32,000 nt of DNA from Wallemia ichthyophaga EXF-994 (GCF_000400465.1 NW_008806281.1:180001-212000), one strand, 5' to 3'; positions 2,973 through 26,945 are shown, numbered from the stretch's first letter. The notes: generated by a model not told the origin, from the letters alone. Numbers and translations are program-made.

Positions 2973-5900
2973 CTATGACAGCAAGAAACCTTTGCCTTCA
3001 CTCATTGCTATCGTAAGCTTTTGCTTCAATACATCCTTGTCGCTGTAATCGGGCAGCTTGAGATAATTGGCGCAAGTCATAACACTAGGAAGCGAGTCGT
3101 CCGCTTTGTACCCAGCTTCTGGCGACTTGCGAACGACAGTGAGCTGAGGATGCAGTCCTCGGAAGCCTGATTCAGAGTTAGCAATTACCTTTCACAAAAA
3201 ACATACCACTGACCTCCAATTGGCAACTTGGGAGAACCAGTGAGGAATTGCAAGAAGTCTCTACGAGCGACCTTGTCAAATTCAGATAAGGCCTCAATTA
3301 ATCTACGCAATGCTGGACTGTCATTGTTGAAACCATGGTCAGCCTTGATGACTTCGCTCAACGTCTCAGTCGTCCAATCTTCATCAGCATTGCCGAACAA
3401 GCTTGTGAGCTCCTCAGGTGTGAAGATCTTCATATCTTCAACGGACAATATCTTTGAGAAACCTTCCACAAATGCATCTACTTGCTTGGTCACACCACTG
3501 ACGAGAGTCGCGTCGATCACTTTATCAATGAAATCGCCAACGTTGTCGAGAGTAACATCGACATTTTCGCCTTTTTCGACCAACTGGTATTCAGGCTGAC
3601 CTGGTAAAGTGAAGTCGAGTGCGAGGTTATCAATCTTATCAGCTATTTGACCCTTGGACAGCTCTGTTGAACCAACAATCTTTTGCACTTCCTCGATACT
3701 CTTTCCGACCAAAGGATCTACAAGCTTGACACCTGCAACTGACTTTGGAATATTCAAACCCATAACCAAATTCATGAGGAGAGGGTTAAATGATATGTCG
3801 ATAATCCTAGAGTCGAGTAAACCCTTAGCGAGGAATTGACCCAAAATTCTGAACAACTTGATCCGCTCTTCACCTCTATCTGATTCAATTTCCTTTGCTG
3901 ACATTGGCATTGGGAAAAGACCAGTCTGTGAGTAGACATATGGTGATTCTGACGAATCTGAGCTTCCTCTCCACAACTTCAAGTCTTTACGTGCGAATTC
4001 TTTACTAACCAAAGAATAGAACTCTAACGTAGGTCCCAAGCCTGTTCCGACTTCTTCAAAGTATTCGATCTCTAATATGCTTGATGAGCCACCGTACAAC
4101 TCAAATACCTTGATGGCAGACTCCAACACGTATTCCCTGGAAATTCTAACCTTTTGTCTTTGCATCCTACCTAGATGAGATGTCGTAGGATCAATTCTAC
4201 GGCTGTCTGAAGATGTGCGTGATGCCTCGTTCTGCCACTTGGTAATCAACCTTGCTGTACCCCAGCTCTGTGCTTGTAAGAAAGCGTATCGGGTCTGGAA
4301 CGTAAAAAGGAAGGGGAATGCAGTTGGCAGGTCGATTGCCCAATCAGGAAGACAGGAACTGTGTTAAAAGTTAGGATTTATTTTCTCGTCAGATACCAAC
4401 GCACCTAGCTATCAACATAGGCTCTTCAAGTTGACGATTGAGCTTAGCGGTAAGCTTGTTGTTGACAAACGTCATCTCTCCAACACCAGTTTCTTGAGAA
4501 AGAGCCGCACCAGGTTGGTTGAGCACATTGACTTCTTGTACACCTGTGCACATAGCATGGAGAACTCTAAGAAGTTGAAGAATGAGAGCATGCTGAGAGT
4601 CTTGAGCGACAGATGCAGGAAGCTGTGACCACGTGTTTTGTACACTTTCAGACGTGATGGCGCTGATATTTGGCTTAACGTCATTCTTCTCTTTCTTAGG
4701 TACTGGTCCTTCCTTACGTCTAAATTTAAGAGTGTAGACGTTTGCGAAAACGTTTCTCGAACCAGCATCATCATTGTCATGTAGATTACTGTAGATGGTT
4801 GACCCCAGATCGACCTTTTCGCCATTCAACTCAAACTCGAGGTGGAAGTCGGTTGGCTTTGTCTTGAGTGCCGATGCGTAAGATCCTTTTGGTTTTGCTT
4901 CCTTGGTACCTTCTGAAGACTCAGGCTTCTTGGAGCTAGATTTGGATGACTTTCTCGCACTCGGTGAAGCTTCAGAAGCAACTGCTGGAGACGGTATACG
5001 CGTACCTTCAGGAGTCTTGGCTTCAATTTCCTTGCCATCATCCTTAACATCCAAATTGATGGTTTTCTCCTGGCCCAGTCTACCTTCACCCACCATGTCA
5101 GCTTCCATCTCATCGTCATACAACTCATCATCAAATTCATCAACGAATTCGCCTGCAAACGGATCATTTCTATCATTTTCATCCTCATCATCCTCGTGTT
5201 CATCATCATCCTCTTCCATAGCACGAAGCTCCTCCTCATCGATATCATCCTCGTCATCTTCGTAATTATCCTCATCATCCTCATCACCTTGGGCCGATTC
5301 CTTGCCCTTTCCTTTTGATTTGCTTTCCTGGTTTGATGCTGTCGGTGTACCAGACAAATCTTCCTTGGAGCTGCGACGGCTACTGCTCTTACTACTTCCC
5401 TCCTTTTTGTCCTTATTTTCCTTCTTGCTGGAGTTCGGTGAAGATGCATCTGCTTCTGGAGGAGGAATGCCGGTTGCGGCGGCAAACGCGGCAAGCACAC
5501 CAGAGAGTCTTGATGAACCACTACCACCTTTACCTGAAAGTCCATTAATGATTCTAGGACGTAAATAGTCGTTTAGAATTTGGAAGGTTGCAATAGCGTG
5601 AACAGAGACGACCATGGTAGGTTGCACCTTGCTTAACTCTGGATCATCAGCCACCAAACGCAGTCTGACTTGACGACTAAGTGCTGAGATCGGGCTACGG
5701 CGACTATCATCACCAAGATTTGATCCAACTGTGCTGACAGAAAATGGTTCCAATCTGCTGAGCGATTCTTGAAGACGTTTAACCAGAGATAACAGAGCAG
5801 ATGGCGAGCCAGGAATTTGTGATCGTCTACTTGAAAATATTTCAATTACTAATTTATGTCTGAGTGCTGTAGGAAGAGAATCGGTATTACCAGTAATGAA

Positions 5901-8670
5901 CGCGAGCAGACCCTCAATCAATCCACTGCGGAGTAACTCAAAGCTAGACATGCTATCTTCACGAGTAAACCAATTGCCAAGCTTCTGCAGTGTTTCCTCT
6001 ATCTGTTCAGCAGGTGTAGTTGAGGATTTGAGACCTTGAACCATCTCACGAATTTCTGCAAGCGCAACTTTGGCATCATCGTAAGTTTCAGCACCATTTT
6101 GTTCCTCCAACTTTGCGAAGATTTCCTTCAGTGCCCTAGCTCTGGCAATAGCTGCATCAGATGGATTTACATTCGAAGCTCTATCGAGGCTCGCAGGTGA
6201 TGCGGTACCCGCAGCTGCTGAAGCAGCAGCGCTACCGGCAGCCAAGTAAGATGCGAGTCTGTTGGCTGGATTACCAGTTCCAAGACTAAGGAAACCTGGT
6301 GATGACTCAGCTTGCGGTATGTCAACTCTAAGGGCTCTTGCGAGGTTGGAAACAGGATCACCACCAAGTGGACCCTCGTCTCTTTCAGCCGTTGAGTTAG
6401 GCTCGGTCTGTTTCTCCTTATCGTCCTTTTCTGAGTTGAGCTTGTCATCGGCAATAACCTCAATCTCGTACATAACACCTTGGCGTCTGAGTGCTGAGTG
6501 ATAGACTTCAGGTAACTTGTTGACGAGAAGCTCAACGAGCTGAAGAGCACCAGTAACCAAGTTAGGGTTATCGCGTGAAGAAAGTATACCTCCAATAAAG
6601 CTAGCCATTGGAATAAATCTGAGTAGGTTCTGTAGTTCAGGTTCCTCTGCAAAGCTGACTATTTTGAGAAGACCAGCTAGTGCTTTACTGCGGACAGGTA
6701 AAGAGACAGATGCAGCGAAAACTTCCACAAATACGGGAAGCATAAGAGACATAAAGCGATCGATTGAAGCTGGGTTAGAGCGGAGACATTCAATGCGGTT
6801 ACGCATTGCTTCTTGACGTGTGGCCTCTCTCTGTCTGGTACGGTTGACAAGGCTTGGCGGTGCATGACTTTCAACCTCTTCATTTGCTCGTGAGCTCTCA
6901 TCTTGGCCTTCACCTGTTTTGTTTACGTATGACTTGTTATCAAATACACCAACTAATGGTTCGTTAGCTAAGTTAAATAAAAGGGAGCTACTCACCAGGT
7001 ACGATGGGTGGAAGTAGCTCTAACGAAAGACTGAGAGCCTCATCGACTTGATCTTTTGGCCTGTGAGCCAAGTTTTCGAGAACGACCATATCAGCTAAAC
7101 CGCCTTCACCAGGGGCAGAACCATCTTTCATTGCTTGCGTAGTTGGATCAGTTTTCTCTGGAACGAGTACACCAGTGAGAATGTTATAAAGAGTGTCAAC
7201 AATGCTGCCATCTAACAAGGCGATGGCAGCCTTAGCACTAGCTTTGCTTGCTGATGACATGGAGCGTAGGAGTGCAGTGAAGGTGTTAATAGTGATCAGA
7301 GGCGTACCTCCTGATCCAGAGGGTAAGAGAAGGCTGACGACTGCAGTAATAAGTGTGCCATCCTCGAGTAGCTTTTCGATAAGATCAGCTTTGTTCTTGT
7401 AACTGTCAATGATACGAACGACACAAAGACAAGCTTGCTCTACTAATCTTTGATCGGAATAACCAAGAACGTCGCGTATTTTCGGAATTGCGTCGTGAAC
7501 CATATCGAAGCTGTCTGGAGGAAGAGCGCGACAGCAGTTGGCGGCAGCGGTGAGCGCAGTACGTTGGACATGGGAATTGAAAAAGTCGAGGTATTGGAGA
7601 ATCGCGGTGAGACCGCCTTCTGAGACAATTTTGTTTGGAACCTCCTGAGCGAGTTTGCCAAGAGTAGAAACAGCTTCTTCAGCGAGGTCAACGTACTGAA
7701 CATCACGTAACTTTGAGCAAAGGATAGGGATAGCGCCGTTTTGAGCAACTCTAATTGATGAGCCGGGGAGGGCTTCCATGAGATTGGCCAAACAACGGCA
7801 AGCGAGGAGCTGAGCCTCACCAACGTTGTCACCGAAGCCACCACCACCAGAAGCAGCGAGAGCGGCCATTATCTCGGCTTCCTCCTGAGCTTCAGCTGAA
7901 AGAGGTTCTTTCTTATTTGATTGATCGGTTGTAGTCGGAGGATCGCCATTCATGATTGCAATTAGTTCTTTAGAGAAAGCTTCAACCTGGAAAGAGCCAG
8001 CGAGAGTTTCTTCAGTAGAAACAGCTAAAACTTCAGCTAACTCTTGAAGAGCAATCATGAGCTGTGTACCATCACCAGAGCCTAAGGGATGAGGACGTTC
8101 GCGGAGGTGTTGGAGGATATTCTTGTAGCGTGAGGATTGACCGAAGATCAAGCCACTGAGCATTCTATAGTCAGCAAGGAGAGCGTGATCGTCTTGAGGG
8201 ATTTCATCTAGGTGGTTGTCGTCGTCGTCGTCATGGTCTAAATCCTGGTCTAAATCAAGGTCATGGTCGTTGTGTTGCTGGTTGTGATGTTGTGGAGAAT
8301 TATCAAGGTTGGGTACGTCATTGCGAGCTTCTGCAGCAGCATCAGCTTCAGCCATGAGAAGGTCATCGTCGTGGTAGGTTGAGGAGTTTCTTTGTGGATT
8401 ACGTCTGTGGTTGGAAGTGTTTGGTTGACGAGATTTCTTAGATTTTTCATTTGGAACGTTTAATTGCTTCTTATCCATTTCTTTATTAGTAGATCTGAGG
8501 TTATACTTTGATTTCTTGTTACTTGTGGTTTCAACTGGTTGCTGGCTCTTTCTCTTTGAAGAACCTGGCTGTGGATTACTGTTGCTGTTGCTGTTGTTTG
8601 TATTGCTCGATTGACTTGTAGATTGCTGTGGATAACTTGGCTTATTTGATTTATTCCTCTTTGGTGGCAT
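2973..8670 (-). CDS. UFD4: HECT E3 ubiquitin ligase, Ufd4/TRIP12 family, about 1853 aa, 4 exons
   Basis: Exons 8670-6996, 6952-4405, 4358-3214, 3166-2973; introns of 43, 46 and 47 nt; 5562 nt in frame. ARM-repeat motifs (LLACRCLANLMEALP, YLDFF..VQRTAL), NNKLTAKLNRQLEEP, EVGTGLGPTLEFY, FLQFLTGSPKLPIGGF and catalytic LPSVMTCANYLKLPDYS. Confidence 0.95.
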
Positions 8671-12017: not shown

Positions 12018-13485
12018 TCATTGCTCGTTGATGATGATACTAGCTTTGCCCATTCCCGTGCCCTGAAATGCGATTAAATTGTTTCAGGTGAGAAGACATC
12101 CAACCTACAATGCACATAGAGGTACATAAAACCTTAGCACCAATTCTCTTAGCTTCTGATAAGATGGTTGCAATCTGACGAGCACCAGTGCATCCAAGAG
12201 GATGACCGAGGGCACTGCAAGTACGTTAGTATAACTAATTCGCGACATAGGCTAACGTACATGGCACCGCCGTTTGGATTGACTTTGACAGGATCTAATC
12301 CAAGTTTCTGAACGCAGTAGAGTGCTTGCGATGCAAATGCCTCGTTGATCTAGACATATCGTTAGAGTATTAAATTCACAACACCCACTCACCTCGTAGA
12401 TATCGACATCAGAGCTAGACAAACCAGCCTTTTGAAGAACCTTTGGAATAGCAACAGCTGGACCAATACCCATAATACGTGGTGGACAACCAACGTCAGC
12501 CGAAGCGACGAATTTGCCAAGAATAGGTAATTTAAGCTTCTCTGCGTTACTGCGCCTTGTGAGAACGACGGCAGCTGCACCATCTGAGACTTGAGATGCG
12601 TTGCCTGCGTGCGTACAACCATTCTGATCGAATGCTGGCTTCAGCTTGGCAAGAGTTTCCTTGGTGACGCCATCTCTGATACCATCGTCCTTGTCGATAA
12701 GTTTATGGGTACCATCTTCACTGTTGACCATGATAGGGGCGATTTCGTTAGTGAACTTGCCTGCCTTTTGAGCGGCTGCAGCTTTCTGCTGAGACTGTGC
12801 AGCGAATTCATCTTGAGCTGCGCGAGAAATACCGAAATCTTTAGCGACATTCTCAGAAGTGATACCCATTCTAAAATATTGTTAGGAGGGTTTAGAGTGT
12901 TGAAGAAAGACCCACGGAATTAGGCAATCGGCTGACTCTTGATTAGAGAGAACATCTTGGTCGAGGTTAGGTGGCATAGCGCCAGCGCCGTAGTGAGCAG
13001 TCATAGACTCAACGCCTGCACCAATACCAACGTCGATCTGGCCAGAAGCGATTTCGAGTGCGATCTGAGACACTGCTTGTAAACCAGACGAGCACTGGCG
13101 ATTAACGGTATTAATAGCTGCCGAGTGGGGAATACCAGCGTAGAGTTGGGCCATACGTGCAAGGCTGGCACCTCCACCTGGTGGCAAAACATTTCCAACG
13201 GCGATATCCTAATAAGCGAGTTAACCGGGTGAGTGATATCAGCAGTGCATACACACTTCGATAAGCTTTGGATCTAATTTGCCACGCTGGATGGATTCTT
13301 TAAAAGCGTGGGCCAGCAGTTTCTCTGGGAGAGTACCGGCTAAACCACCCTTTCTAGCCTGTGTGACGGGTGAGATATAAGTTTGGGATATGAGGAGATG
13401 GACGCACCCGAGTAATTGGTGTCCTTACAGCAGATACAATTACTACGTCATTTGCGTTCTTTGAGATTATATTTTGCTTTGCCAT
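12018..13485 (-). CDS. POT1: 3-ketoacyl-CoA thiolase (beta-oxidation type, Pot1-like), about 396 aa, 7 exons
   Basis: Exons 13485-13408, 13358-13257, 13208-12916, 12870-12393, 12349-12261, 12214-12109, 12062-12018; introns of 43-49 nt; 1191 nt in frame. Catalytic motifs [44 protein letters not shown]. Confidence 0.92.
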
Positions 13486-13542: not shown

Positions 13543-15694
13543 ATGAGATTTCATTCACGGCTTATGAATTTGAAGCCATCTCTTATCAATAAACCCGCTG
13601 ACGGTGTTAGGCCTGCAATTTGGAAGTCACTCGCACCGTACATCTCCAACCACCATCTTAAATTACCTGCGTTGCCAGTCCCATCTCTGGAAAACACTGC
13701 AGATCAAGTCTTAAATTCTATCAAGCCATTGACTAATGACGTCAACCAATTTACGCATCTTGAGGGGAAATTGCACAGATTTCTAGCCAACGAAGGCCCA
13801 GCACTCCAGCAGAGACTTATTTCACGCAGTCAAGATCCAGAGCACGTCAATTGGCTTGAGATGTATTGGGACGACGCAGCATACATGTCCTATCGCGATT
13901 CTGTCGTCGTCAACGTTTCTTACTTTTATGGTTTCGCACCACCAAAGCAAAAGCTGGATTTACCTCAGTATGCTGCTAGAGTTGCTCACCACGCTCTTCA
14001 ATTTAGAAAGTTGCTCTATGACGGCCAAATCGAACCTGATGCGATCGGTAGAGACAATTCACCAATTTGCATGAACTCGTACAGGTTCCTCTTTGACGCC
14101 TGCCGCATACCAGCCAAGCCAGCTGATTACGTCAGTGTGCAAAGACAAGGTATCGGCCATGTCGCAGTCGTTTACCGTGGTAATTGGTGGAGCATCCCGT
14201 CAACCACGGGCGACGGTACACCTCTCTCGATTTCAGAGCTTGAGCAAAATATAGAATACATCCTTGATCAGCAAGCCGAAGAGGGGTACGTTGGTCTTCT
14301 TACGACACGCAACAGAGATAAGTGGGCAGATGTGAGTGATCTTGGTCAGGAATACTTTTGCTCACGCTATCTAGGATCGATCTGCTCTGTTGCAAATTGA
14401 CAAAAAGAATGAAGAGTCTTTAGCTGCAATCGAATCAGCTGCCGTTGTTATCACATTAGACGGTAACCAAGCAATCAACTCGCCAGTCGATAAGTCTAGA
14501 CACCTCTGGCATGCAGGTGAAACAGGGAGATTCTCTAACAACCGCTTTGTCGACAAGCCCCTCCAATTCATCTGCTGGCAGGACGAGTCTTCTGAGACAG
14601 CTAGTGGTGGTTTTATGGGTGAGCATTCCTGTGCTGACGGGACGCAACCTCAAAGAGTCTGTGATTACGTTATGGAGAGCATTCAAAAGGCTTCACTGCC
14701 CTCAAATGAGCTGCTCGATCAAGATACTGTTAATGCAGAGAGAAGAGATACCCAAACACCAATCCCCCTCCCGTTCAACCTCGACGGTCTTCAAGGGTCA
14801 ATAAATGATGCCTGGAATGAGATCAAGGAGCTGGCAAATAGCCAAGTTCTTGGATATATCTTAACTAATTATGGCAAAGGAGCGATCAAGAAAGCAGGTT
14901 TTTCACCAGATGCGTGGACGCAGATGGTCATACAGCTCGCTTACTCTCGTTTGGCAGCTAGAGAAGGTGAAGAAGCATTCCCAGCTCCTACATATGAAGC
15001 AGCAATGACACGTTCATTCGCTAATGGCCGTACTGAATGTATTCGCTCAGCCACCACTGACAGCGCGACATTTACTAATGCTATGAACGATCCTTCTAAA
15101 ACCGCTGATGAACGTATAAACGCCTTGGAAGTCGCTGTAAAAACACACTTGAAAAATGCGAAGCAGGCCGGTTTAGCTCAAGGTTGCGATAGACATCTGT
15201 TTGGTAGGCAATTCAATCAGCTTTTAGCACGTACTTTGCTAATAGGTTCTTAAAAGGTCTGAAGAAATCACTGCTTCCTACTGAACCTGTGCCTGAGATT
15301 TTCAATGACGGGCTCCTCTCAAAATCAGGCACTTGGACACTGTGAGTGTAGAGAGCTGTGATTTAACTACACTTAACGACACTTCAGCTCAACCTCACAG
15401 ATATCATCAAAATACTTTGACACATATGGATGGGGCGAAGTGGTGCCAAGCGGGTGAGAGGTTTAGCAGTACCATTTGAAATATTCTAACCTTAATTCTA
15501 GTTTTGGAGTCGCCTACGCTATCTTCGAGGATTATCTTCAATTCACAGTAACAAGTCATAGCGCTTATGGCACAGCTTCAGAGAAGAATGACATGGGCAA
15601 AGAACGTAACGAAGCATTTTTGAAGGATTTGACCACAGCTGCGAACGACATGTTGTCGCTTTTTGGGTCTTCTGAACGTCAATCTAAACTTTAA
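13543..15694 (+). CDS. CAT2: Carnitine O-acetyltransferase with C-terminal PTS1 (SKL), about 653 aa, 5 exons
   Basis: Exons 13543-14331, 14375-15203, 15257-15341, 15388-15453, 15502-15694; introns of 43, 53, 46 and 48 nt; 1962 nt in frame. Motifs LPALPVPSLE, NWLEMYWDDAAY, catalytic GEHSCADG, YEAAMTRSF..GRTE, G.GCDRHLFGL, WTLSTS. Ends ...RQSKL*. Confidence 0.94.
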
Positions 15695-16342
15695 GTCTAG
15701 TTGAGGGACCGCTGTGTCAGATATTTGCATAACGTTTACGATTTAATTAAACTCCATATAAATAATGAATACCTTTGATAAAACCAGCTGGGATTTGGTT
15801 ATCGAAAACCTGAAAATGGTCTCACTTCTGCTGATATGTGGTTAAGATAAATCTAACTTGGTAGCAAAATAAATTCAACGCAACATTCCAATTGCTTTCA
15901 TCGTACAGTACTCTACAAGATAACCTCGTTGAAGTGGAGGTTGCAAAAAGTTCTATGGATTGGCGCACATTGATAACAACAGGATTTCGTTTCATGTTAT
16001 ATTAAGCATGCTGAAAAAATTTTGATAAAAAACCAATACATGAACGCATTTAGTACCAACTGATATCAATATTGCGCGATAATCTTATAAATGAACTGCG
16101 ACTAGCATCACCGATTGCAAATCAGTCTCAAATTTGCGTTGAAATGCACATATTAAAGAATGTGTACTCGAATTTTAGGTCCTTTTATAACGTAATAAAG
16201 TAAAACCCTTATCCCCTTGACATCAAGACACAAATTGTCAGATAGTAAACCAAGACTTAGACCAGCCACAAGATACGATGAAGATCATGTCGCGTCGATC
16301 CACCCTACCTCCACATCCATATTCAAAAGGAAAAGAGCTAAA

Positions 16343-17003
16343 AAACCAGCTGATGGTGTTAGGCCTGCTTTGTGGAAGTCACTCACGCCGTACATCTCAA
16401 ACCATGATTTGAAGCTGCCTGCGTTACCAGTGCCATCTTTGGAGAATATAGTCGTGCAGTTGTTGACATTTGTCAAACCATTGACGAATGACGTCACCCA
16501 AGTCAGAGATCTCGAAGGCAAACTGAAGAAATTTCTAACAAAAGAGGACCTCAAGCTCCAGAAGAGGATAATTTCACACAGTCAAAATCCAGAGCACGTC
16601 AATTGGCTCGAGCAGTATTGGGACGACGCAACCTACATGTCTTATCGTGATTCTGCCGTTGTGAATGTATCTTATTATGCTGGATAGAAATCAATGAATC
16701 ACAATTGTAACTTAATTTAATATGCAGCTCGAATGGCTCACTTTGTTCTTCAATTCCGAAAGATGCTCTACGACGGCAATATCGGACCTGATACACGGCT
16801 GCAACAAAACGCCAATGTGCATGAACGCATACAGATTCATCTTTGATGCCTGCCGCATACCAGCCAAGCCAGCTGATTACGTCAGTGTGCAAAGACAAGA
16901 TATCGGTCACGTCGCAGTCGTTTACCGTGGTAATTGGTGGAGCATCCCGTCAACCACGGGCGACGGTACACCTCTCTCGATTTCAGAGCTTGAGCAAAAT
17001 ATA
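16343..17003 (+). pseudogene. Partial tandem copy of the CAT gene 5' part (pseudogene fragment)
   Basis: Collinear with 13591-14253 at offset 2752, then 2750. In-frame stops TAG 16685-16687 and TAA 16718-16720, a 2-nt deletion near 16793-16797, no in-frame ATG upstream of the homology, and an abrupt end at 17003. Confidence 0.85.
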
Positions 17004-17159
17004 ATGATGATGAAATCTGATTATATTGTTAAGACGATACATGTTATAAACCGCGTCCATCAATACTTCTTAAAGCATGAGGAGTCAAAGGGGATGCGGA
17101 ATTTACTGGAAGCGTTTCTTTACTAGCGTCGTAATTTGTAAATTGTTGGTGGTTCTCAA

Positions 17160-17826: not shown

Positions 17827-17940
17827 TGCTGAGTGTAAGGGTACTCCACATAGTCCGAAAAAATTTCCCGAAAAGGATTTGAAGTAGTCAATGTCTAATA
17901 TTTACGATGTTGTTGCTACTTGAACGGTTCACACCATCAA

Positions 17941-18013
17941 GCCTTGCTAGCTCAATCGGTAGAGCGTGTGACTCTTAATCACAAGGCTGCGGGTTCGAGC
18001 CCCGCGTGGGGCT
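17941..18013 (+). tRNA. tRNA-Lys, anticodon CTT, intronless, 73 nt
   Basis: Cloverleaf checked by hand: D stem GCTC/GAGC, anticodon stem TGTGA/TCACA with loop CTCTTAA, T stem GCGGG/CCCGC with TTCGAGC, discriminator T, internal A and B boxes. Confidence 0.96.
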
Positions 18014-18017
18014 AATA

Positions 18018-20341: not shown

Positions 20342-22077
20342 ATGAACGATCCGCTTACATCCAAATTCAATTACGAGGAAGACTTTAAATACGATAACAG
20401 CAACGACGACTCGGAGGAATTCGTTTATGAAAATGCAGATGCAGATAATCTCGTTGAGCCCACCAGAGAAGTCAGCGAGCAACTCGAGAACACATTGCAG
20501 CTCAATACAGGCAAGGAGAAAGACAAAGAAAACTCGCAAGATGTCAGTGATGAGTATTTATCACGTCTATTCAAAGCAGCTTCCTCCGGCGATCTAGATA
20601 CTCTCGAATTTCTCCAACCCTCATTCGCGCATTCAAATGAGACTAATAAAAGAAGCGGAATCACTCCTCTTCATGCTGCTTCTAGTAATGGACACTTGGA
20701 TGTCGTCAAGTACCTCATTCAAGACGCTGGTGCGATGCTCGAGTTGGAAGACAGGGAAGGTGAAACCGCGCTGTTGAGAGCCTCTCACAAACCAGCCAAC
20801 CTTCCGACTGTCGCTTATCTTCTTGGTGCTGGCGCCAATGTCGCACACGTTGACAGCGACGGTTGGAATGCCCTACATAACGCCTCTGCTAATGGATCTG
20901 AAGATGCCGTCAGAATTATACTTAACAACGCTGACAAGGATATCATTGATAGCGTCGGCGGTATGCAAGGTGGTCCTGGATATACTCCTCTAATGAATGC
21001 AGCAAGCAGAGGTCATCTCCACGTTGTCATTTTCCTTCTCACTGAGGCGAGCGCACCTGCAGATCCTTTCATTCGCAACAAATCTGGTGCTACTGCCTAC
21101 TCACTAGCAGCTGAGAGCTTGAATTTTGATATCTGCGAGGTGAGTGTGTTTCAATACCCTACACAATACCAACATTGTCCCAGTTCATTCTCGAGTCTGA
21201 GAAGGGGCTCGTAAAGGATCCTGCTTCTTATAACCCTCTCAAATACCATCAGTCAGCACCTATCGCCATCCTCGAAAACCAGCGCTTGGATTGTCGTATG
21301 TCAACGCTGGCGAAAACAGGCGGTATTCCGCGTTGGTCCAACTCGGGCTTAGGACAGGGCGGTAGAAGACCTAAGTGGGAGCTACTAGATGGTCGTCCAA
21401 TAGATGCTACAGATCCTTTCAACGATGTACAGATACCTTCAATCGGCAAACCGTTCACACTCAACCTGACAACGGTATCAGGAAAGCCATCAAGCAATCG
21501 TGGCGCGTATCACTGGACTACTGATGACTGGCTAGTATGGAGATCAGCCGGTAAAGAAGATGGCGAGGGATGGATGTATGCACACGACTTTAGTGCTAAT
21601 GGCCTTCAATGGAAGGGGAACAAAAACAAGGAAATCGAGAATCTCGAAAAGGGTACCGGATTAAGCTCTATCAAGGCTACACAGATGTTTGGTGGTAGAT
21701 CCGGTAAGAGTGGTAGCAAGACAACATCCTCAGACAATGTAGACAAGAACTACTGGGTGAGGAGGCGAAGATGGGTGCGAGTGCTTCAAAGAGATCCAAG
21801 TAGGCTTTCATATATTTTTACAATACTTTCTAACCAGCATACAGCCTTGACACTTGCATACACAACCCCGGAACTCAAAACACCAAAGGCAAGACCAAGT
21901 GGAATGGCCGATGTAGCATTGAAGGATATACCACCAGCACACAGCAACACAAACGACAGTAAAAGCAAACTTAGTGCTAAAAGCACTCCGTTCAATCCAG
22001 CCAATGCAATGAGTATGTCTACACCCTCACTGCCAGCAGCGACGACCAACTTCAGCGCACGATTCCCCAAGGCATGA
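20342..22077 (+). CDS. UPA1: Ankyrin-repeat + DysF-domain protein, Upa1-like, lacking FYVE/RING, about 548 aa, 3 exons
   Basis: Exons 20342-21139, 21184-21799, 21845-22077; introns of 44 and 45 nt; 1647 nt in frame. About five ankyrin repeats (TPLHAASSNGH, TALLRAS, NALHNASANG, TPLMNAASRGH), then ENQRLD..TLAKTGG.PRWS.SGLG and a DysF signature (DW...EGWMYA..F...WVRRRRWVR). Family assignment is from recalled similarity. Confidence 0.75.
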
Positions 22078-22186
22078 TAGCAAGGCTTGAAAGCGAATGA
22101 GAGTAAACCGTAGGCATTGAATTGTAAATACCTAGAATGATTAAATAGCACTCGTTATCTACGCACTTCCATCATCTCGTCATAGA

Positions 22187-24669
22187 ATGCTGCAAAATCA
22201 ACAGCGCAAACGGCCGCACTACAATGAGGAGGATATAAAAGCGCAGTTGTCGCAGGTACATTTGATAGAATTCGATAGCTCGAATGTGCAGGACGAGTCG
22301 CTCGAGCAACTTGGTCCAATACTAAAGAATATCAACGAATCGCAGCAGGAGAGAGACTATGTGAAGGCATTAGATGCTTTCATAGCAGAGAAGGACAAGG
22401 AGATTGAGGAGCAGTGCAAATACAATTATCAGGTGAGTTGTACAGCAGCGGCACTGAGAAGCACGGCTGATCAAATGTTTGAAGGACTTTGTAGGATCAG
22501 TGAAGACGCTTCTTGGAGTGCGCAAGAGCACAATGCAGCTTAAGCAGAAGATCGTCCAGGTAAATGATGACATGCAGTCTGCAGGAAGATCTCTAGTCAT
22601 GAAGGTGTGTATTACAACACATACATCATAATGCACATCTAATATTCCTTACAGAAGAAGGAATTACTTGAAATAAACAGAACAAACGGTAATATCGACC
22701 AAGCTACAGAAATGATGCGCGCATTTCAGCATGTACTCGAAATGATGAAAAGAGTTGATGAGCTGATAGAGAGTAGGAAATACTACGCAGCTTTACGCTC
22801 TCTTGACGATCTCGCTATTCACCATCTTCCACCATTAGCGAATTACACACTCGGTGCTCACCTATTAGATGGTATTCCAGCAATGCGTCGTACAGTCTGC
22901 GATAGTGCATCATTCGAGTTGAAAGACTGGCTGCTCGGTATCAGGAACATTCAGCGCATAGTCGGTGCTTTAGCTCTATCCAACACGAATGAAAGACAGC
23001 AGCGATGGCGCAGCAAAAAGCAATCAGATCCCCTATTAGTCAACAGCGGTATTAACTCCCCATTAGAACTGGTCATGAATCAAGATAATTTCGATCCACT
23101 AAATAACAACGACGTTAGTATCGACTTCAAGCCGCTACTGCACTGTATACACATCTACGACGCACTGGCAGCTAGACAAGACTTAAGGAAAGCGTATCAG
23201 GAGGACAGAAAGTCGCAAGCTGATTTGATTTTGTCAACAAGAAGTGATCACGATTTCTCGCATTCGTTGCAGCATCTCCTACAGGACGTTGTCGGATTCT
23301 TTATCGTCGAGAGGTATGTACTCAGTCTGACTAGTGGCTTCAGGAGCGAGAGTAATGTCGATGATCTGTGGGATCTCATATGCTCTGGTATATCTAGCGT
23401 AGTTAGGGATGGTCTGCGCACATCACAGTCGCATGTGACAGTCAAAGAAAATGTAATGACGTTTATTTGGACGCTCGAAAGCTACGATTTTGACGTACAG
23501 CAATTGAACACGCTACTTCACGCATTGTTCGAAGAATATACCACATTACTTCATGATAACTACTCAAAAGAGCTAAGGAGCGTATTTGAAGGCAGTGATC
23601 AGCAAGCTCTTGTGGTCCAGTCTTCTGAGGATCTCGAAAGTATACTTAGTATTTGCTGGGTTGACAACTCTTCAGTCTCAGCCGTATATTCTCAGAAACC
23701 ACCTATTCATTTACCCTTTTCAAGCATATACCCAGATTCATGCAGATTATTGCGACAATTTATCGAAGATTTTTACAAATACACGGATGGATACGCTCAA
23801 GTGGATACTAACAGTCTAATCGTGGATGGCTTAGACAGTGTGATGAGAGATGGAGTAGTCAAAGCGCTAAGCGTGATTGCCGAGGGTGTCTTTAATCTCT
23901 CACAAGCGGTCCAGTTGGCTGTAGATGTCAGTTATTTCGAGTTTGCAGCTGGAGAGCTAATCAAGTGGTTGAGTGCTCTGTTTGGAGGTGTACACGACAC
24001 ATCCCGTTCGTCTCACCAGCTGAATTGTATCAAAGACGTTAAGAAGCTGTCAAAGCAAACTTTGACGCGTATAAGTGCTCTTATTGGCGACAAACTCGAC
24101 TCATTATTCGAGATGGCAGAGGTTGAATGGACCCCAGACTCTTCTACGGCACTCAAGAGTGACGTAAATCCGAGCGAGTATTTAAGGGAAATGACAGATT
24201 ACCTCTCTTTTATCAGCTCATCGGTGCTGACTAATTTGCCTACTAGTCTGCGCGACCAGGCTTATGCGAATGCTGTGCAACATATTGCTGAAGGTATACT
24301 TGATTTGTTGGTCGGTAGCGAAGTGCAAGTGATTAATGAAAAGGGACTAGATAACGTCAGAATCGACGTCAATTTCCTCATGACACAGTGTATTAGCGAC
24401 CAAAAACCACCAACGCTTACTGAACTGGATCAGATACTGAATTTGGTAAAGCTGAATCACATACAGGCATTCTTTGATAGTTCGACGTGAGTGCTAGATT
24501 GACAATGTTCAATTTATCTAACCAACACTTAAGATTCAGGAGAACTAAATATGGTAATGTGACGCCCAAGGTGAGTTACGACTTATCTAGACTCTTTAAA
24601 CTTAGCAGAGAACAGAACTTATTGGCGGTGTTGGACAAGCTGAGCAAAAGTCATTTAACTAGATTGTGA
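22187..24669 (+). CDS. SEC15: Exocyst subunit Sec15, about 762 aa, 5 exons
   Basis: Exons 22187-22432, 22485-22604, 22655-24486, 24534-24570, 24616-24669; 2289 nt in frame. Motifs LEQLGPILK, KYYAALRSLDDL, ELKDWLLGIR, IDFKPLLHCIHIY, VVGFFIVE, PSEYLREMTDYL. Confidence 0.9.
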
Positions 24670-24739
24670 ATTTGTCTATATTTTTGTAATTTCGTCACTG
24701 TCTGTCTAATCGACTATTGTTATCATCATCACCATCATC

Positions 24740-25555
24740 ATGGACGGAGATCAAAATCAGCGGAAAATATCAGTTTTCAAACCATACGAGAAGACGAGTT
24801 GTATGTGGATGCTGAAATTCGCGACTTGTATTTACACGATATAGCCACGCAGGAATACCCAGAATCGTACTTTGAGCCTACGTCGAGCGAGCTTGCAAAA
24901 GCACACACAGCGACATCGAAGCGATTAGAGAGTGAATATGAGGGCCCATTAAAGACGCGAGTGATGAGGGAGAGAGAGGAGAAGCAGCGCAAGGCTAGAT
25001 GGCCGACAGTAAGTGAAGTGTTATGACGTACGTTTGTACGACACTGACACTGCCAACTCCCCATACAGACGAATATACGCGTGAAGTTTGCAGATAGAAG
25101 TATCATACAGTCAGCATTCAGCAGTACTGAGGTTATAGCGCGGGTTTATGACTTTGTGAAAGATACGCTGGACGATAAGTACACAAACGAGGAATTTGTT
25201 CTGTGTGAGTGTTGGTGGTGCATGGAGTGTATTGTACACACAAAGCTCACAATACACAGACCAAAGTCCACCGAGGATTGAATTCAAACCAAACGAAAGC
25301 AAACGCCTTATTGACTTGGGGCTAGCCCCGTCATCGGTGCTCATGATAAAGTTCAAGACAGACAGCCTCAATGCTTCGACATCGAAAGCTCCTCTGAAAG
25401 GTAGTCTCACTGCGAGTGCTCACTCGCTGCCTACGCCTCCGAGCTTCGAGTCGGAACAGAGGACGGAGAAGAACACAGTAGAGAAGCCAGTTCCGAGTGG
25501 AGAGAAGAAGGAGAAAAAGATACCAAAGTGGCTGCTGAAAGGACTAAAAAAGTAG
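24740..25555 (+). CDS. Small UBX-domain protein (Cdc48/p97 cofactor, TUG/UBXN6-like C-terminal module), about 218 aa, 4 exons
   Basis: Exons 24740-24800, 24845-25008, 25069-25204, 25260-25555; introns of 44, 60 and 55 nt; 657 nt in frame. Motifs YPESYFEPT, PLKTRVMRE, IRVKFADR, VYDFVK, LYQSPP, LGLAPSSVL, KIPKWL. Confidence 0.85.
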
Positions 25556-25604
25556 ATTATGTACGAAGTTATGTCATTGGTTAGATAGCGCTATAGTTGA
25601 GAAT

Positions 25605-25813: not shown

Positions 25814-26945
25814 ATGGTTGGAAAACTTTCCCTACTCTCTCTTGCAGCAGTGGCTGGTGTAGCATCGGCGCAATCGATCGACTATCCCGGAGTGGTCTCG
25901 TCGAATGAAAACGGACCTACAAACCCAGACGAACCGGAACTGGGCACTGACACGCCGGACGACTCGACAGCGCGACTGCTCACAGTGAACAACATTGATG
26001 TGAGTAATGATAAATGAGGCACGCGCGCCCGCACTTACACCCAAATCAGGATTTCTGTATATTCGGACCAAAGGAAGCCGACAAAACGATTGGCGACACG
26101 GAATCTGAGCAGGTAGCTTGGTGCACGCAACCGCGCAACAACGCGCGCCTGATTCCCGAAGATACTTTCACGGGTGCGTAGGATTATAAGTGCAGGAGTG
26201 CGCGCATCGAGACAGTCGCTCACAACACCGCACAGGCCTGCACTTCGTCAAGACACCCTACTACATCCAGCTGCAAGGGTGGGGAGATCTGACCAAGATC
26301 GGGGTGAAGGACGGCGACTACGGCGGCGAGCTCGACCCACACGGTGCCGAAGGAAATGGGAACCCTGTCGGTGGGAATGTCACATCTAACATAACTGGTG
26401 ATGCGGTATTCTACGAGGAGTGGATGGAATTCATTTCGTATGAGCAATTCTGTCTGCGTGTATGTACGGCAGCGGACGATATGTGGGATGCGTCAACTAT
26501 GTGCGAGCACAAGCTGGACGAGATGGGCTGTGGGTTCATCATGCCTGGTGATTATGCGGGCAAGCAGGATGAATTTATTTCGTGCGATGCAGACGCAGCT
26601 TTCCCCCCAGGTGTTTATCCAGATGGAGACGGCTACAGCACTTTCAACCAGCGCTACACGGGTACTATCACCTCTAACACTTATGAGGTATACACCGTAG
26701 GCGATACAGCTACCCCGTCGGCACCGTACAGCACACCTTCTAGCTCCAACTGTGCCACCCAGTCCAGTCTGCATATGTACGTGCACACAGAGAGCGAAAG
26801 CGACGGCCCGCAATCAACCTCCGACGACAGCGGCAACAGTAGCACACAGGCAGAGAACGGTGATAGCGGTGCACGTAACATGGCTCTCGGCGCCATCGCT
26901 ACTGTCTCCATTGGGCTCATTAGTGCATTCGCTGTCTTGTCTTAA
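25814..26945 (+). CDS. Secreted, probably GPI-anchored mannoprotein (MP88/macrophage-activating glycoprotein-like), about 339 aa, 3 exons
   Basis: Exons 25814-25999, 26050-26173, 26236-26945. Signal peptide, then DFCIFGP, VAWCTQPRNNARLIP, GGELDPHGA.GNGNPVGG, FCLRVC, CEHKLDEMGCGFIMPG; Ser/Thr-rich tail and hydrophobic C-terminus after ...GDSGA. Confidence 0.85.

What the first reader, a model, noticed from the sequence alone, without database searches (positions are those of the whole stretch)
20342..22077. Minimal Upa1-like endosomal mRNA-transport adaptor: PAM2L and PAM2 motifs kept, FYVE and RING missing
Seen: two acidic-FxY motifs at the N-terminus (EEDFKY 20375-20392; DDSEEFVY 20405-20428), about five ankyrin repeats, a DysF domain and, near the C-terminus, SKLSAKSTPFNP (21964-21999), which fits the PAM2 spacing SxL[NS]xxAxxFxP with Ser at the Ala position. 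The ORF stops at 22077 and SEC15 starts 109 bp later, leaving no room for more exons. Established: Ustilago maydis Upa1 couples Rrm4/Pab1 mRNPs to Rab5 endosomes using an N-terminal PAM2, PAM2-like FxY(P) motifs, ankyrin repeats, a PI3P-binding FYVE and a RING; DysF domains of Pex30-family proteins and TECPR1 act at membranes. Inference: a roughly half-size adaptor with a relocated PAM2 and no FYVE could tether mRNPs to another membrane via DysF, or work with a split-off FYVE-RING partner. That would be a rewired mRNA-hitchhiking system.
Basis: partly seen in the sequence, partly recalled or inferred. Interest (0 to 1): 0.78.

Follow-up and report, generated by a model that had tools for sequence, protein, structure and literature searches.

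The report
Wallemia Upa1 orthologue lacking FYVE and RING
This gene is the Wallemia ichthyophaga counterpart of Upa1, the fungal adaptor that hooks mRNA particles onto endosomes, but it has lost the endosome-binding half while keeping the short motifs that bind the mRNA carrier, so it cannot work the way the Ustilago model says.

Summary
A three-exon gene (20342-21139, 21184-21799, 21845-22077, + strand) encodes a 548-aa protein. It is identical to XP_009267952.1 of Wallemia ichthyophaga EXF-994, which NCBI names "E3 ubiquitin-protein ligase mib1"; it has no RING, so the name is misleading.

The layout is a disordered N-terminus with three FxY motifs (two fit the published PAM2L code [DE][DE]FxY), ankyrin repeats, a DysF-type domain and a short disordered tail. 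SEC15 starts 109 bp after the stop.

The best named relatives are 800-950-aa ANK–DysF–FYVE–RING proteins. They include the published Upa1 homologues of Coprinopsis, Coniophora, Auricularia and Rhizophagus. In agaricomycete orthologues the acidic F[VI]YP motifs sit at the same place before the ankyrin repeats.

Five Wallemia-clade genomes all end the gene just after DysF, so the FYVE/RING loss is real and old. DysF domains in Upa1 orthologues were already published.

The C-terminal "PAM2" is only a near match (Ser at Ala7). It is kept within Wallemia but deleted in the most distant relative.

The DysF-tether idea is untested. It is weakened by U. maydis Upa1ΔFR, which is cytosolic and non-functional. 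Whether Wallemia has Rrm4 could not be checked.

Verdict: a new variant of a known family, of moderate interest.

The parts
20342..21139 (+). Exon 1 (aa 1-266): disordered N-terminus plus ankyrin repeats
   Evidence: ORF and splice sites. The spliced product equals XP_009267952.1.
20366..20374 (+). FxY motif 0 (FNY, aa 9-11)
   Evidence: F[NS]Y is conserved in the window, L007, L006, L003 and W. hederae. The residues before it are not acidic.
20375..20392 (+). PAM2L-like motif a (EEDFKY, aa 12-17)
   Evidence: Fits the published code [DE][DE]FxY. It reads EEEFRY in L003 and EQDFKY in L006. AF2 pLDDT is about 50, i.e. disordered.
20405..20428 (+). PAM2L-like motif b (DDSEEFVY, aa 22-29)
   Evidence: Matches the published core [DE][DE][DE]FVYP except for Pro->Glu. 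It aligns with agaricomycete EEFVYP motifs 60-110 aa upstream of the first ANK repeat. It is conserved in all five clade members.
20549..21139 (+). Ankyrin-repeat domain (aa 70-266, 5-6 repeats)
   Evidence: Pfam Ank_2, Ank_4 and Ank, E down to 6e-32. AF2 pLDDT is above 93.
21140..21183 (+). Intron 1 (44 nt, GTGAGT..CAG)
   Evidence: The same position is used in L006 and L007; the intron is absent in L003.
21184..21799 (+). Exon 2 (aa 267-471, plus the first base of codon 472)
21220..21798 (+). DysF-type domain (aa 279-471): ENQRLD ... W..DW ... GWMYA..F....W ... WVRRRRWVRV
   Evidence: Aligns with the matching region of ANK–FYVE–RING orthologues, with invariant W/R columns. The DysF part of Pfam PF06398 is hit by 6 of 16 family members, and by the window protein at E=0.53. 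AF2 shows two long strands at aa 290-302 and 458-469, with a confident core but mean pLDDT 62. Foldseek against the PDB found no match.
21800..21844 (+). Intron 2 (45 nt, in frame, GTAGGC..CAG, CTAAC branch site)
   Evidence: An intron is present at the same position in L003, L006 and L007.
21845..22077 (+). Exon 3 (aa 472-548 plus TGA): disordered tail
   Evidence: pLDDT below 50.
21964..21999 (+). PAM2-like motif SKLSAKSTPFNP (aa 512-523)
   Evidence: It has the L3, [NS]4, F10 and P12 of the consensus xxLNxxAxEFxP, but Ser at position 7 and Pro at position 9. It is conserved in L007, L006 and W. hederae and deleted in L003.
22051..22074 (+). C-terminal FSARFPKA (aa 541-548)
   Evidence: FS[AS]RFP at the extreme C-terminus is the only tail element kept in all clade members, L003 included. 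Its role is unknown.
22078..22186 (.). 109-bp intergenic spacer before SEC15 (ATG at 22187)
   Evidence: The same arrangement is seen in L003, L006 and L007.

Best explanation
This is the Wallemia-lineage orthologue of the fungal Upa1 family (ancestral layout: PAM2L–ANK–DysF–coiled coil–PAM2L–FYVE–RING).

Shown: the whole C-terminal half (coiled coil, second PAM2L, FYVE, RING) has been lost. What remains is under purifying selection: a disordered N-terminus with a cluster of acidic FxY (PAM2L-type) motifs, the ankyrin solenoid, the DysF-type domain and a short tail.

Inferred mechanism:
- The FxY cluster still docks an MLLE3-type domain of an Rrm4-like RNA-binding protein.
- The protein cannot bind PI3P endosomes through a FYVE domain. 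Any link to a membrane or organelle must therefore come from the ANK–DysF module (lipid binding as in Pex30 or TECPR1 DysF, or an ANK-bound partner), or from a separate FYVE–RING (Pib1-like) protein.
- Within Wallemia proper, the tail has gained a PAM2-like motif that may recruit the Pab1 MLLE domain.
For: Identity and orthology:
- The protein is an exact match to XP_009267952.1 of W. ichthyophaga.
- The best named hits (35-42% identity over 60-80% of the query) are 800-950-aa proteins with Ank, FYVE (PF01363) and RING (PF13639). They include C. cinerea, Coniophora puteana, Auricularia and R. irregularis, the species listed as Upa1 homologues in PMC4466420.
- An exhaustive profile search gave 1148 relatives. 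The full-length ones share the ANK–DysF–FYVE–RING layout.
- DysFN/DysFC in Upa1 orthologues is published.

PAM2L motifs:
- Agaricomycete orthologues carry [DE]nF[VIT]YP 60-110 aa before the first ANK repeat. The window has FKY and FVY at aa 15 and 27 and LHAAS at aa 110.
- BLAST against an ustilaginomycete-type orthologue starts at the motif itself.
- The FxY core with acidic flank is the published determinant. The Pro after it is dispensable.
- aa 1-30 are 63% identical between the window and the 60%-identical relative L003. The following linker is only 21% identical.
- The motifs lie in a predicted disordered region.

Loss of FYVE and RING:
- Five clade genomes end the gene right after DysF, with SEC15 next.
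- tblastn with agaricomycete FYVE and RING pieces finds nothing in the window, L003 or L006.

DysF lipid binding elsewhere: TECPR1 binds sphingomyelin (PMC10476172) and Pex30 binds phosphatidic acid (PMC12101077).
Against: - No Rrm4, Upa2 or Pib1 search of the Wallemia genome was possible, so the partner is unproven.
- In U. maydis, Upa1 lacking aa 1048-1287 (FYVE+RING) is evenly cytosolic and non-functional. There, the ANK/DysF-like part alone does not target a membrane.
- The motifs lack the Pro of FVYP.
- The DysF assignment for this sequence is weak (Pfam E=0.53, no Foldseek hit).
- The PAM2-like motif deviates at Ala7 and Glu9 and is absent in L003.
- W. ichthyophaga grows as cell clumps rather than long hyphae (my own knowledge). 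Long-distance endosomal mRNA transport may therefore matter little there.
Confidence: 0.5

Rival explanations
1. The ANK–DysF protein has left mRNA transport altogether. Rrm4 is lost or lacks MLLE domains in Wallemia, as reported for Malassezia globosa and Cryptococcus neoformans. The conserved acidic FxY cluster then binds some other partner, and the protein acts in a different membrane or stress process.
For: Secondary loss of Rrm4 and Upa2 in some basidiomycetes is documented. The Wallemia genome is very compact (my own knowledge), and the window is gene-dense. The engineered FYVE-less Upa1 is non-functional for mRNA transport in U. maydis. The tail motifs are lineage-specific.
Against: PAM2L motifs are reported to be kept in the basidiomycetes that retain Rrm4, and Vps8 PAM2L sequences are absent from the M. 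globosa homologue. Here the motifs are kept across about 40% sequence divergence in a disordered region, which argues for a retained MLLE3-type partner.
Confidence: 0.3
2. Gene fission. The FYVE–RING half survives as a separate Pib1-like gene elsewhere in the genome, and the two products act together. The system would then be split rather than rewired.
For: Most ascomycetes have exactly such short FYVE–RING orthologues without ANK. The break lies at a domain boundary just after DysF.
Against: No FYVE or RING is found within the 32-kb window or the 13-17-kb syntenic loci. Nothing is known about the rest of the genome. No interaction surface between the two halves is known.
Confidence: 0.15
3. 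Artefact. The FYVE and RING exons exist but were missed because of a wrong gene model, an assembly break or read-through.
For: Automated annotations of other W. ichthyophaga strains and of W. hederae fuse this gene with SEC15 and a UBX gene into 1446-1478-aa models.
Against: Those fused models simply read through the 5' UTR of SEC15 and add no FYVE or RING. Four independent assemblies show the same stop and the same C-terminal FS[AS]RFP, with SEC15 following shortly after. tblastn finds no FYVE or RING.
Confidence: 0.02
4. A decaying remnant with no function.
For: It corresponds to a loss-of-function truncation in U. maydis.
Against: The ORF is intact and intron 2 keeps its position in all four assemblies whose DNA was read. 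ANK is 68% and DysF 60% identical between the window and a relative that differs by 15 points of genomic GC.
Confidence: 0.03

Closest known systems
Ustilago maydis Upa1 (UMAG_12183, 1287 aa)
   Same: It shares homologous ankyrin repeats. The following DysF-like region is seen in orthologues of the same subphylum, not in U. maydis Upa1 itself, which I did not examine. It also has acidic FxY (PAM2L) motifs in a disordered N-terminus and a PAM2-type motif somewhere in the protein.
   Different: The window protein has no FYVE, no RING, no second PAM2L and no coiled-coil region, and is under half the size. The PAM2-like motif is C-terminal and non-canonical. The FxY motifs lack the following Pro.
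Agaricomycete Upa1 homologues (e.g. Coprinopsis cinerea, Coniophora puteana CONPUDRAFT_72656; about 900 aa)
   Same: These are the closest named relatives, at 35-42% identity. They share the N-terminal twin [DE]nFxY motifs at the same distance from ANK, and the same ENQRLD…GWxYA…WVRRRRWVRV DysF region followed by LP[FY]xxP.
   Different: They continue with a coiled coil, EEFHYP, FYVE and RING. The Wallemia protein stops about 80 aa after DysF.
Engineered U. maydis Upa1ΔFR (aa 1048-1287 deleted)
   Same: It has the same kind of domain content as the natural Wallemia protein: PAM2(L) motifs plus ANK and the middle region, without FYVE or RING.
   Different: Upa1ΔFR is cytosolic and non-functional in U. 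maydis and still holds PAM2L2. The Wallemia form is conserved by selection, so it must have a FYVE-independent role.
S. cerevisiae Pib1 / mammalian Rififylin, and the short ascomycete Upa1 orthologues (FYVE–RING only)
   Same: They belong to the same wider family according to the literature.
   Different: They are the complementary half. They keep what Wallemia lost and lack what Wallemia kept.
DysF domains of Pex30-family peroxins and TECPR1
   Same: They share the DysFN/DysFC-type W/R-rich motifs. Family members hit the DysF part of Pfam PF06398. These domains bind phosphatidic acid or sphingomyelin.
   Different: The window protein has no transmembrane or reticulon-like region and no β-propeller. 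Its own Pfam score is below threshold, and lipid binding is untested.

Membership tests
Upa1 family (endosomal mRNP adaptor) | Sequence homology or orthology to Upa1 and its published homologues across ANK and the following region | tested here: met
   the best named hits are ANK–FYVE–RING proteins, including the C. cinerea, C. puteana, Auricularia and R. irregularis homologues (E 1e-75 to 1e-42). Searches show the alignment. A strict reciprocal best-hit test against the whole Wallemia proteome was not possible.
Upa1 family (endosomal mRNP adaptor) | PAM2-like motif: acidic stretch plus FxY core in a disordered region | tested here: met
   Two matches to [DE][DE]FxY, at aa 13-17 and 25-29, plus FNY at aa 9-11. 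They are positional homologues of agaricomycete FVYP motifs, conserved in five clade members and in a disordered region. The Pro after Tyr is absent, but it is published as dispensable.
Upa1 family (endosomal mRNP adaptor) | Canonical PAM2 (xxLNxxAxEFxP) for the Pab1 MLLE domain | tested here: inconclusive
   SKLSAKSTPFNP has L3, S4, F10 and P12, but Ser7 and Pro9. It is conserved in four Wallemia genomes and deleted in L003. A Ser7/Pro9 variant (GLNPHSKPFVPA) occurs at the N-terminus of another family member, P0027. PAM2 is dispensable for U. maydis Upa1.
Upa1 family (endosomal mRNP adaptor) | Ankyrin repeats (five in Upa1) | tested here: met
   Pfam Ank families. AF2 solenoid at aa 70-266.
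Upa1 family (endosomal mRNP adaptor) | PI3P-binding FYVE domain | tested here: not met
   There is no Pfam FYVE hit. The ORF stops at 22077 and SEC15 starts at 22187. tblastn with agaricomycete FYVE pieces is negative in the window, L003 and L006.
Upa1 family (endosomal mRNP adaptor) | C-terminal RING domain | tested here: not met
   RING is dispensable in U. maydis.
Upa1 family (endosomal mRNP adaptor) | Binds Rrm4 MLLE3 and shuttles on Rab5a endosomes | not testable with these tools
   This needs the Wallemia Rrm4 sequence and experiments. No paper mentions both Wallemia and Rrm4.
DysF (dysferlin/peroxin) domain proteins | DysFN/DysFC sequence signature or the DysF part of Pfam PF06398 | tested here: inconclusive
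   The window protein scores E=0.53, below cut-off. Six of 16 aligned orthologues hit the same profile region, down to 9.4e-8. SMART DysFN/DysFC is reported for Upa1 orthologues.
DysF (dysferlin/peroxin) domain proteins | DysF fold (two long antiparallel strands with a W/R ladder) | tested here: inconclusive
   The AF2 model shows two long strands holding ENQRLD and WVRRRRWVRV, with mean pLDDT 62. Foldseek against the PDB gave no significant match. A profile search of PDB sequences gave none either.
MIB1-type E3 ubiquitin ligases (the current NCBI name) | RING, MIB/HERC2 and ZZ domains | tested here: not met
   Only ankyrin repeats are detected. The resemblance to MIB1 is limited to ANK.

The most novel reading that the evidence does not exclude
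The N-terminal PAM2L–ANK–DysF half of Upa1 is an autonomous unit. In Wallemia it ties Rrm4-type mRNPs to a membrane through DysF–lipid binding, independent of PI3P and FYVE. If so, the ANK–DysF region ignored in U. maydis studies would be a second cargo- or membrane-binding module of the whole family.
Probability: 0.15. Interest if true: 0.7.

Novelty: new variant of a known kind. Interest (0 to 1): 0.45.

Why it matters
Upa1 is the textbook example of a protein that couples mRNPs to moving endosomes, and in U. maydis its FYVE domain is essential for that job.

A whole basidiomycete lineage keeps the Rrm4-docking motifs, the ankyrin repeats and the DysF domain under selection while having discarded FYVE and RING. 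That makes it a natural separation-of-function allele. It suggests the poorly studied ANK–DysF half has a role of its own.

It also gives a concrete system for testing two questions. One is whether DysF can replace FYVE as a membrane anchor. The other is whether the family also acts away from endosomes.

It also corrects a misleading database name ("E3 ubiquitin-protein ligase mib1") and flags fused gene models in other Wallemia annotations.

Tried and rejected
- Foldseek of the C-half model against the PDB gave no match with E<1.
- A profile search of PDB sequences with alignment A1 was swamped by ankyrin columns. The ANK-free profile A4 gave only one chance hit.
The two halves were therefore modelled separately.
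- An exact look-up of the SEC15 ORF found no contig.
- A literature search for the SRA/ENA sample accessions found nothing, and neither did a search for Wallemia plus Rrm4.
- A 23-aa tblastn hit of the FYVE N-terminal piece at window 16826-16758 (-) with E=0.003 lies in a frame full of stops inside a carnitine acyltransferase gene. I rejected it as chance.
- I considered that proteins listed without PF01363 might be other FYVE-less forms. They are 775-954 aa long, some still list a RING family, and several gene models visibly break at the intron inside FYVE. I did not count them.
- I considered the fused 1446-1478-aa models as evidence for a longer protein. I rejected this because they read through the SEC15 5' UTR.
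- A search of the Wallemia genome for Rrm4, Upa2 or Pib1 was not possible.

Full report
**Gene and organism.** The region 20342-22077 (+) holds a three-exon gene: exons 20342-21139, 21184-21799 and 21845-22077, with GT..AG introns of 44 and 45 nt. The spliced 548-aa product is identical to XP_009267952.1 / EOR01161.1, [quoted passage not shown]. The window is therefore from this halophilic basidiomycete. The stop is at 22075-22077 and the SEC15 ATG at 22187, 109 bp later.

**Anatomy.**
- Pfam detects only ankyrin repeats.
- AlphaFold2 models aa 70-266 as a confident ANK solenoid (pLDDT above 93). aa 1-69 are disordered, with pLDDT about 50 and no secondary structure in aa 1-41. The FxY motifs are therefore accessible.
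- The C-half model has a confident core built on two long strands that carry ENQRLD and WVRRRRWVRV, and a disordered tail.
- Foldseek and PDB sequence searches gave no DysF hit.
- The window sequence touches the DysF part of Pfam PF06398 only at E=0.53. Six of 16 aligned orthologues hit the same profile positions, down to 9.4e-8.
- Müller et al. state that some Upa1 orthologues contain DysFN and DysFC domains. I accept 'DysF-type domain' on that transitive basis.

**Family.**
- A search with the C-half alone found agaricomycete ORF fragments with the same signature: ENQRLD, GWxYA, WVRRRRWVRV.
- On one such contig (L001) the gene continues downstream into a third acidic FxY (DDDDESFHYPGA), a FYVE domain and a RING. 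Upstream it starts with DDDSSEEFRYPGADDSSEEFVYPGAEED, about 45 aa before the ANK cap helix.
- The exhaustive profile search found 1148 relatives. Among the top 150 listed, the full-length proteins (800-1200 aa and longer) from several fungal lineages show ANK–DysF–(coiled coil)–FYVE–RING.
- The full-length query gave named hits at 35-42% identity carrying PF01363 (FYVE) and PF13639 (RING). They include Coprinopsis cinerea, Coniophora puteana CONPUDRAFT_72656, Auricularia subglabra and Rhizophagus irregularis. These are the species whose proteins the Feldbrügge laboratory lists as Upa1 homologues.
- The window gene is therefore the Wallemia member of the Upa1 family.

**PAM2L motifs.**
- The published determinant is an FxY core preceded by acidic residues, with search code [DE][DE]FxY and core [DE]3FVYP. 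The Pro is dispensable for MLLE3 binding.
- The window protein has EEDFKY and SEEFVY, plus FNY just upstream.
- Across agaricomycete orthologues, one or two [DE]nF[VIT]YP motifs lie 60-110 aa before the first LHxAA of ANK. In Wallemia the motifs are at aa 15 and 27 and LHAAS is at aa 110.
- Five Wallemia-clade sequences were compared: the window, L007 at 85% identity, L006 at 76%, W. hederae, and L003 at 60% identity with 30% GC.
- In those, aa 1-30 are conserved like a folded domain: 63% identity between the window and L003, against 21% for the next 40 residues.
- Two such motifs within 15 aa never arose in 20000 shuffles.
Binding remains untested.

**Loss of FYVE and RING.**
- In L003, L006, L007 and W. 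hederae the gene ends shortly after DysF with the same C-terminal FS[AS]RFP, and SEC15 follows.
- tblastn with agaricomycete coiled-coil, FYVE and RING pieces finds nothing real in the window or the syntenic loci. One 23-aa hit lies in a frame full of stops.
- ORFs downstream of SEC15 show no Cys-rich domain.
- The 1446-1478-aa models in other Wallemia annotations fuse this gene with SEC15 and a UBX gene by reading through the spacer. They add no FYVE.
- The truncation is therefore real and predates the divergence of these species.
- Homology to the long forms runs through LP[FY]xxP just after DysF and then stops.

**PAM2-like motif.**
- SKLSAKSTPFNP has the Leu3/Phe10 spacing and the Pro12 of xxLNxxAxEFxP, but Ser at position 7 and Pro at position 9.
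- It is the only match of its kind in six frames of the window. A relaxed pattern hits 1.4% of shuffled proteins.
- It is conserved in four Wallemia genomes but lies inside a segment deleted in L003.
- Other family members carry N-terminal PAM2 matches: TTLNAQAPAFVPS in P0064, and a Ser7/Pro9 variant GLNPHSKPFVPA in P0027.
- A PAM2 in this family is therefore plausible, but here it is unproven. In U. maydis the PAM2 is dispensable anyway.

**Mechanism.**
- In U. maydis, deleting aa 1048-1287 (FYVE+RING) leaves Upa1 evenly cytosolic and non-functional. RING alone is dispensable.
- The Wallemia protein is a natural equivalent of that truncation, yet it is conserved. It cannot act as a PI3P-anchored adaptor.
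- My best reading (confidence about 0.5) has two parts. First, it still docks an Rrm4-type MLLE3 domain through the FxY cluster. Second, it uses the ANK–DysF module, or a separate partner, for localisation.
- DysF domains of TECPR1 and Pex30 bind sphingomyelin and phosphatidic acid. That makes a lipid anchor conceivable, but the U. maydis result argues against assuming it.
- The main rival (about 0.3) is that Wallemia, like M. globosa and C. neoformans, lost Rrm4, and that the protein now serves another process. Gene fission with a surviving Pib1-like partner (about 0.15) is a variant of the main reading.
- None of these could be resolved, because the Wallemia genome could not be searched with the remaining tools.

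**Novelty.**
- The Upa1 family, its PAM2L motifs and the DysF domains of its orthologues are all published. The protein itself is in NCBI under a misleading name.
- What appears new is a basidiomycete lineage whose Upa1 orthologue lacks FYVE and RING but keeps the PAM2L cluster. Müller et al. describe FYVE plus PAM2L as conserved in the basidiomycetes that have Rrm4 and Upa2.
- I rate it a new variant of a known kind, interest 0.45.

Noticed in passing
window 20342-25600; proteins P0283-P0293 and P0297: Annotations of other W. ichthyophaga strains and of W. hederae merge this gene, SEC15 and a UBX/TUG-like gene into single 1446-1478-aa 'hypothetical' or 'UBX domain-containing' proteins. The junction reads through the SEC15 5' UTR (…PANAM|TLVIYALPSSRHRMLQNQQRK…), so these look like annotation artefacts. 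Some of the models also splice out part of the DysF region.
   Followed up: partly
window 20342-22077: The NCBI/UniProt name 'E3 ubiquitin-protein ligase mib1' is misleading. The protein has no RING, MIB/HERC2 or ZZ domain. Only its ankyrin repeats resemble MIB1.
   Followed up: yes
L003/L004/L005 (ENA ERZ27248842, ERZ27248865, ERZ27248852): An unidentified relative of Wallemia with only about 30% GC (60% protein identity) recurs in many metagenome assemblies of what looks like one ENA series. It keeps the ANK-DysF/SEC15 pair, but RPL3 lies on the other side. It lacks intron 1 and the PAM2-like tail segment.
   Followed up: partly
proteins P0068, P0075, P0085, P0088, P0093, P0101, P0104, P0105, P0113, P0153, P0155: A second group of family members carries a conserved N-terminal motif PP.PGE.H.[FY]YG..H……LP instead of the acidic FxY cluster. 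The one named member, P0075, is from Ambispora (Glomeromycotina); the others are unnamed. It could be their counterpart of PAM2L or a different docking site.
   Followed up: no
proteins P0027, P0064, P0069: Some Upa1-family members have N-terminal PAM2 matches: TTLNAQAPAFVPS, TNLNAQAPTFVPS, and a Ser7/Pro9 variant GLNPHSKPFVPA. The last has the same deviations as the Wallemia C-terminal motif.
   Followed up: partly
window 22051-22074: The extreme C-terminus FS[AS]RFP(K/I) is the only tail element conserved in every clade member, including the one that lost the PAM2-like segment. It matches no short motif that I know.
   Followed up: no
window 13543-15253 and 16217-17126 (+): Two carnitine/choline O-acyltransferase genes lie in tandem on the + strand. 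A thiolase gene lies on the opposite strand just upstream (12252-12869, -). This looks like a small fatty-acid/acetyl-unit shuttle cluster.
   Followed up: no
window 17940-18014 (+): A tRNA-Lys(CTT) gene lies between the second carnitine acyltransferase gene and RPL3.
   Followed up: no
window 3185-8670 (-): A large HECT E3 ligase with TRIP12-like TPR/ARM repeats (Ufd4/TRIP12 type) spans several ORFs.
   Followed up: no
window 25814-26945 (+): A probable secreted protein. It has a signal-peptide-like start (MVGKLSLLSLAAVAGVASAQS), a Cys-containing middle, a Ser/Thr-rich stretch and a hydrophobic C-terminus (GPI-anchor-like). It has no Pfam match.
   Followed up: no
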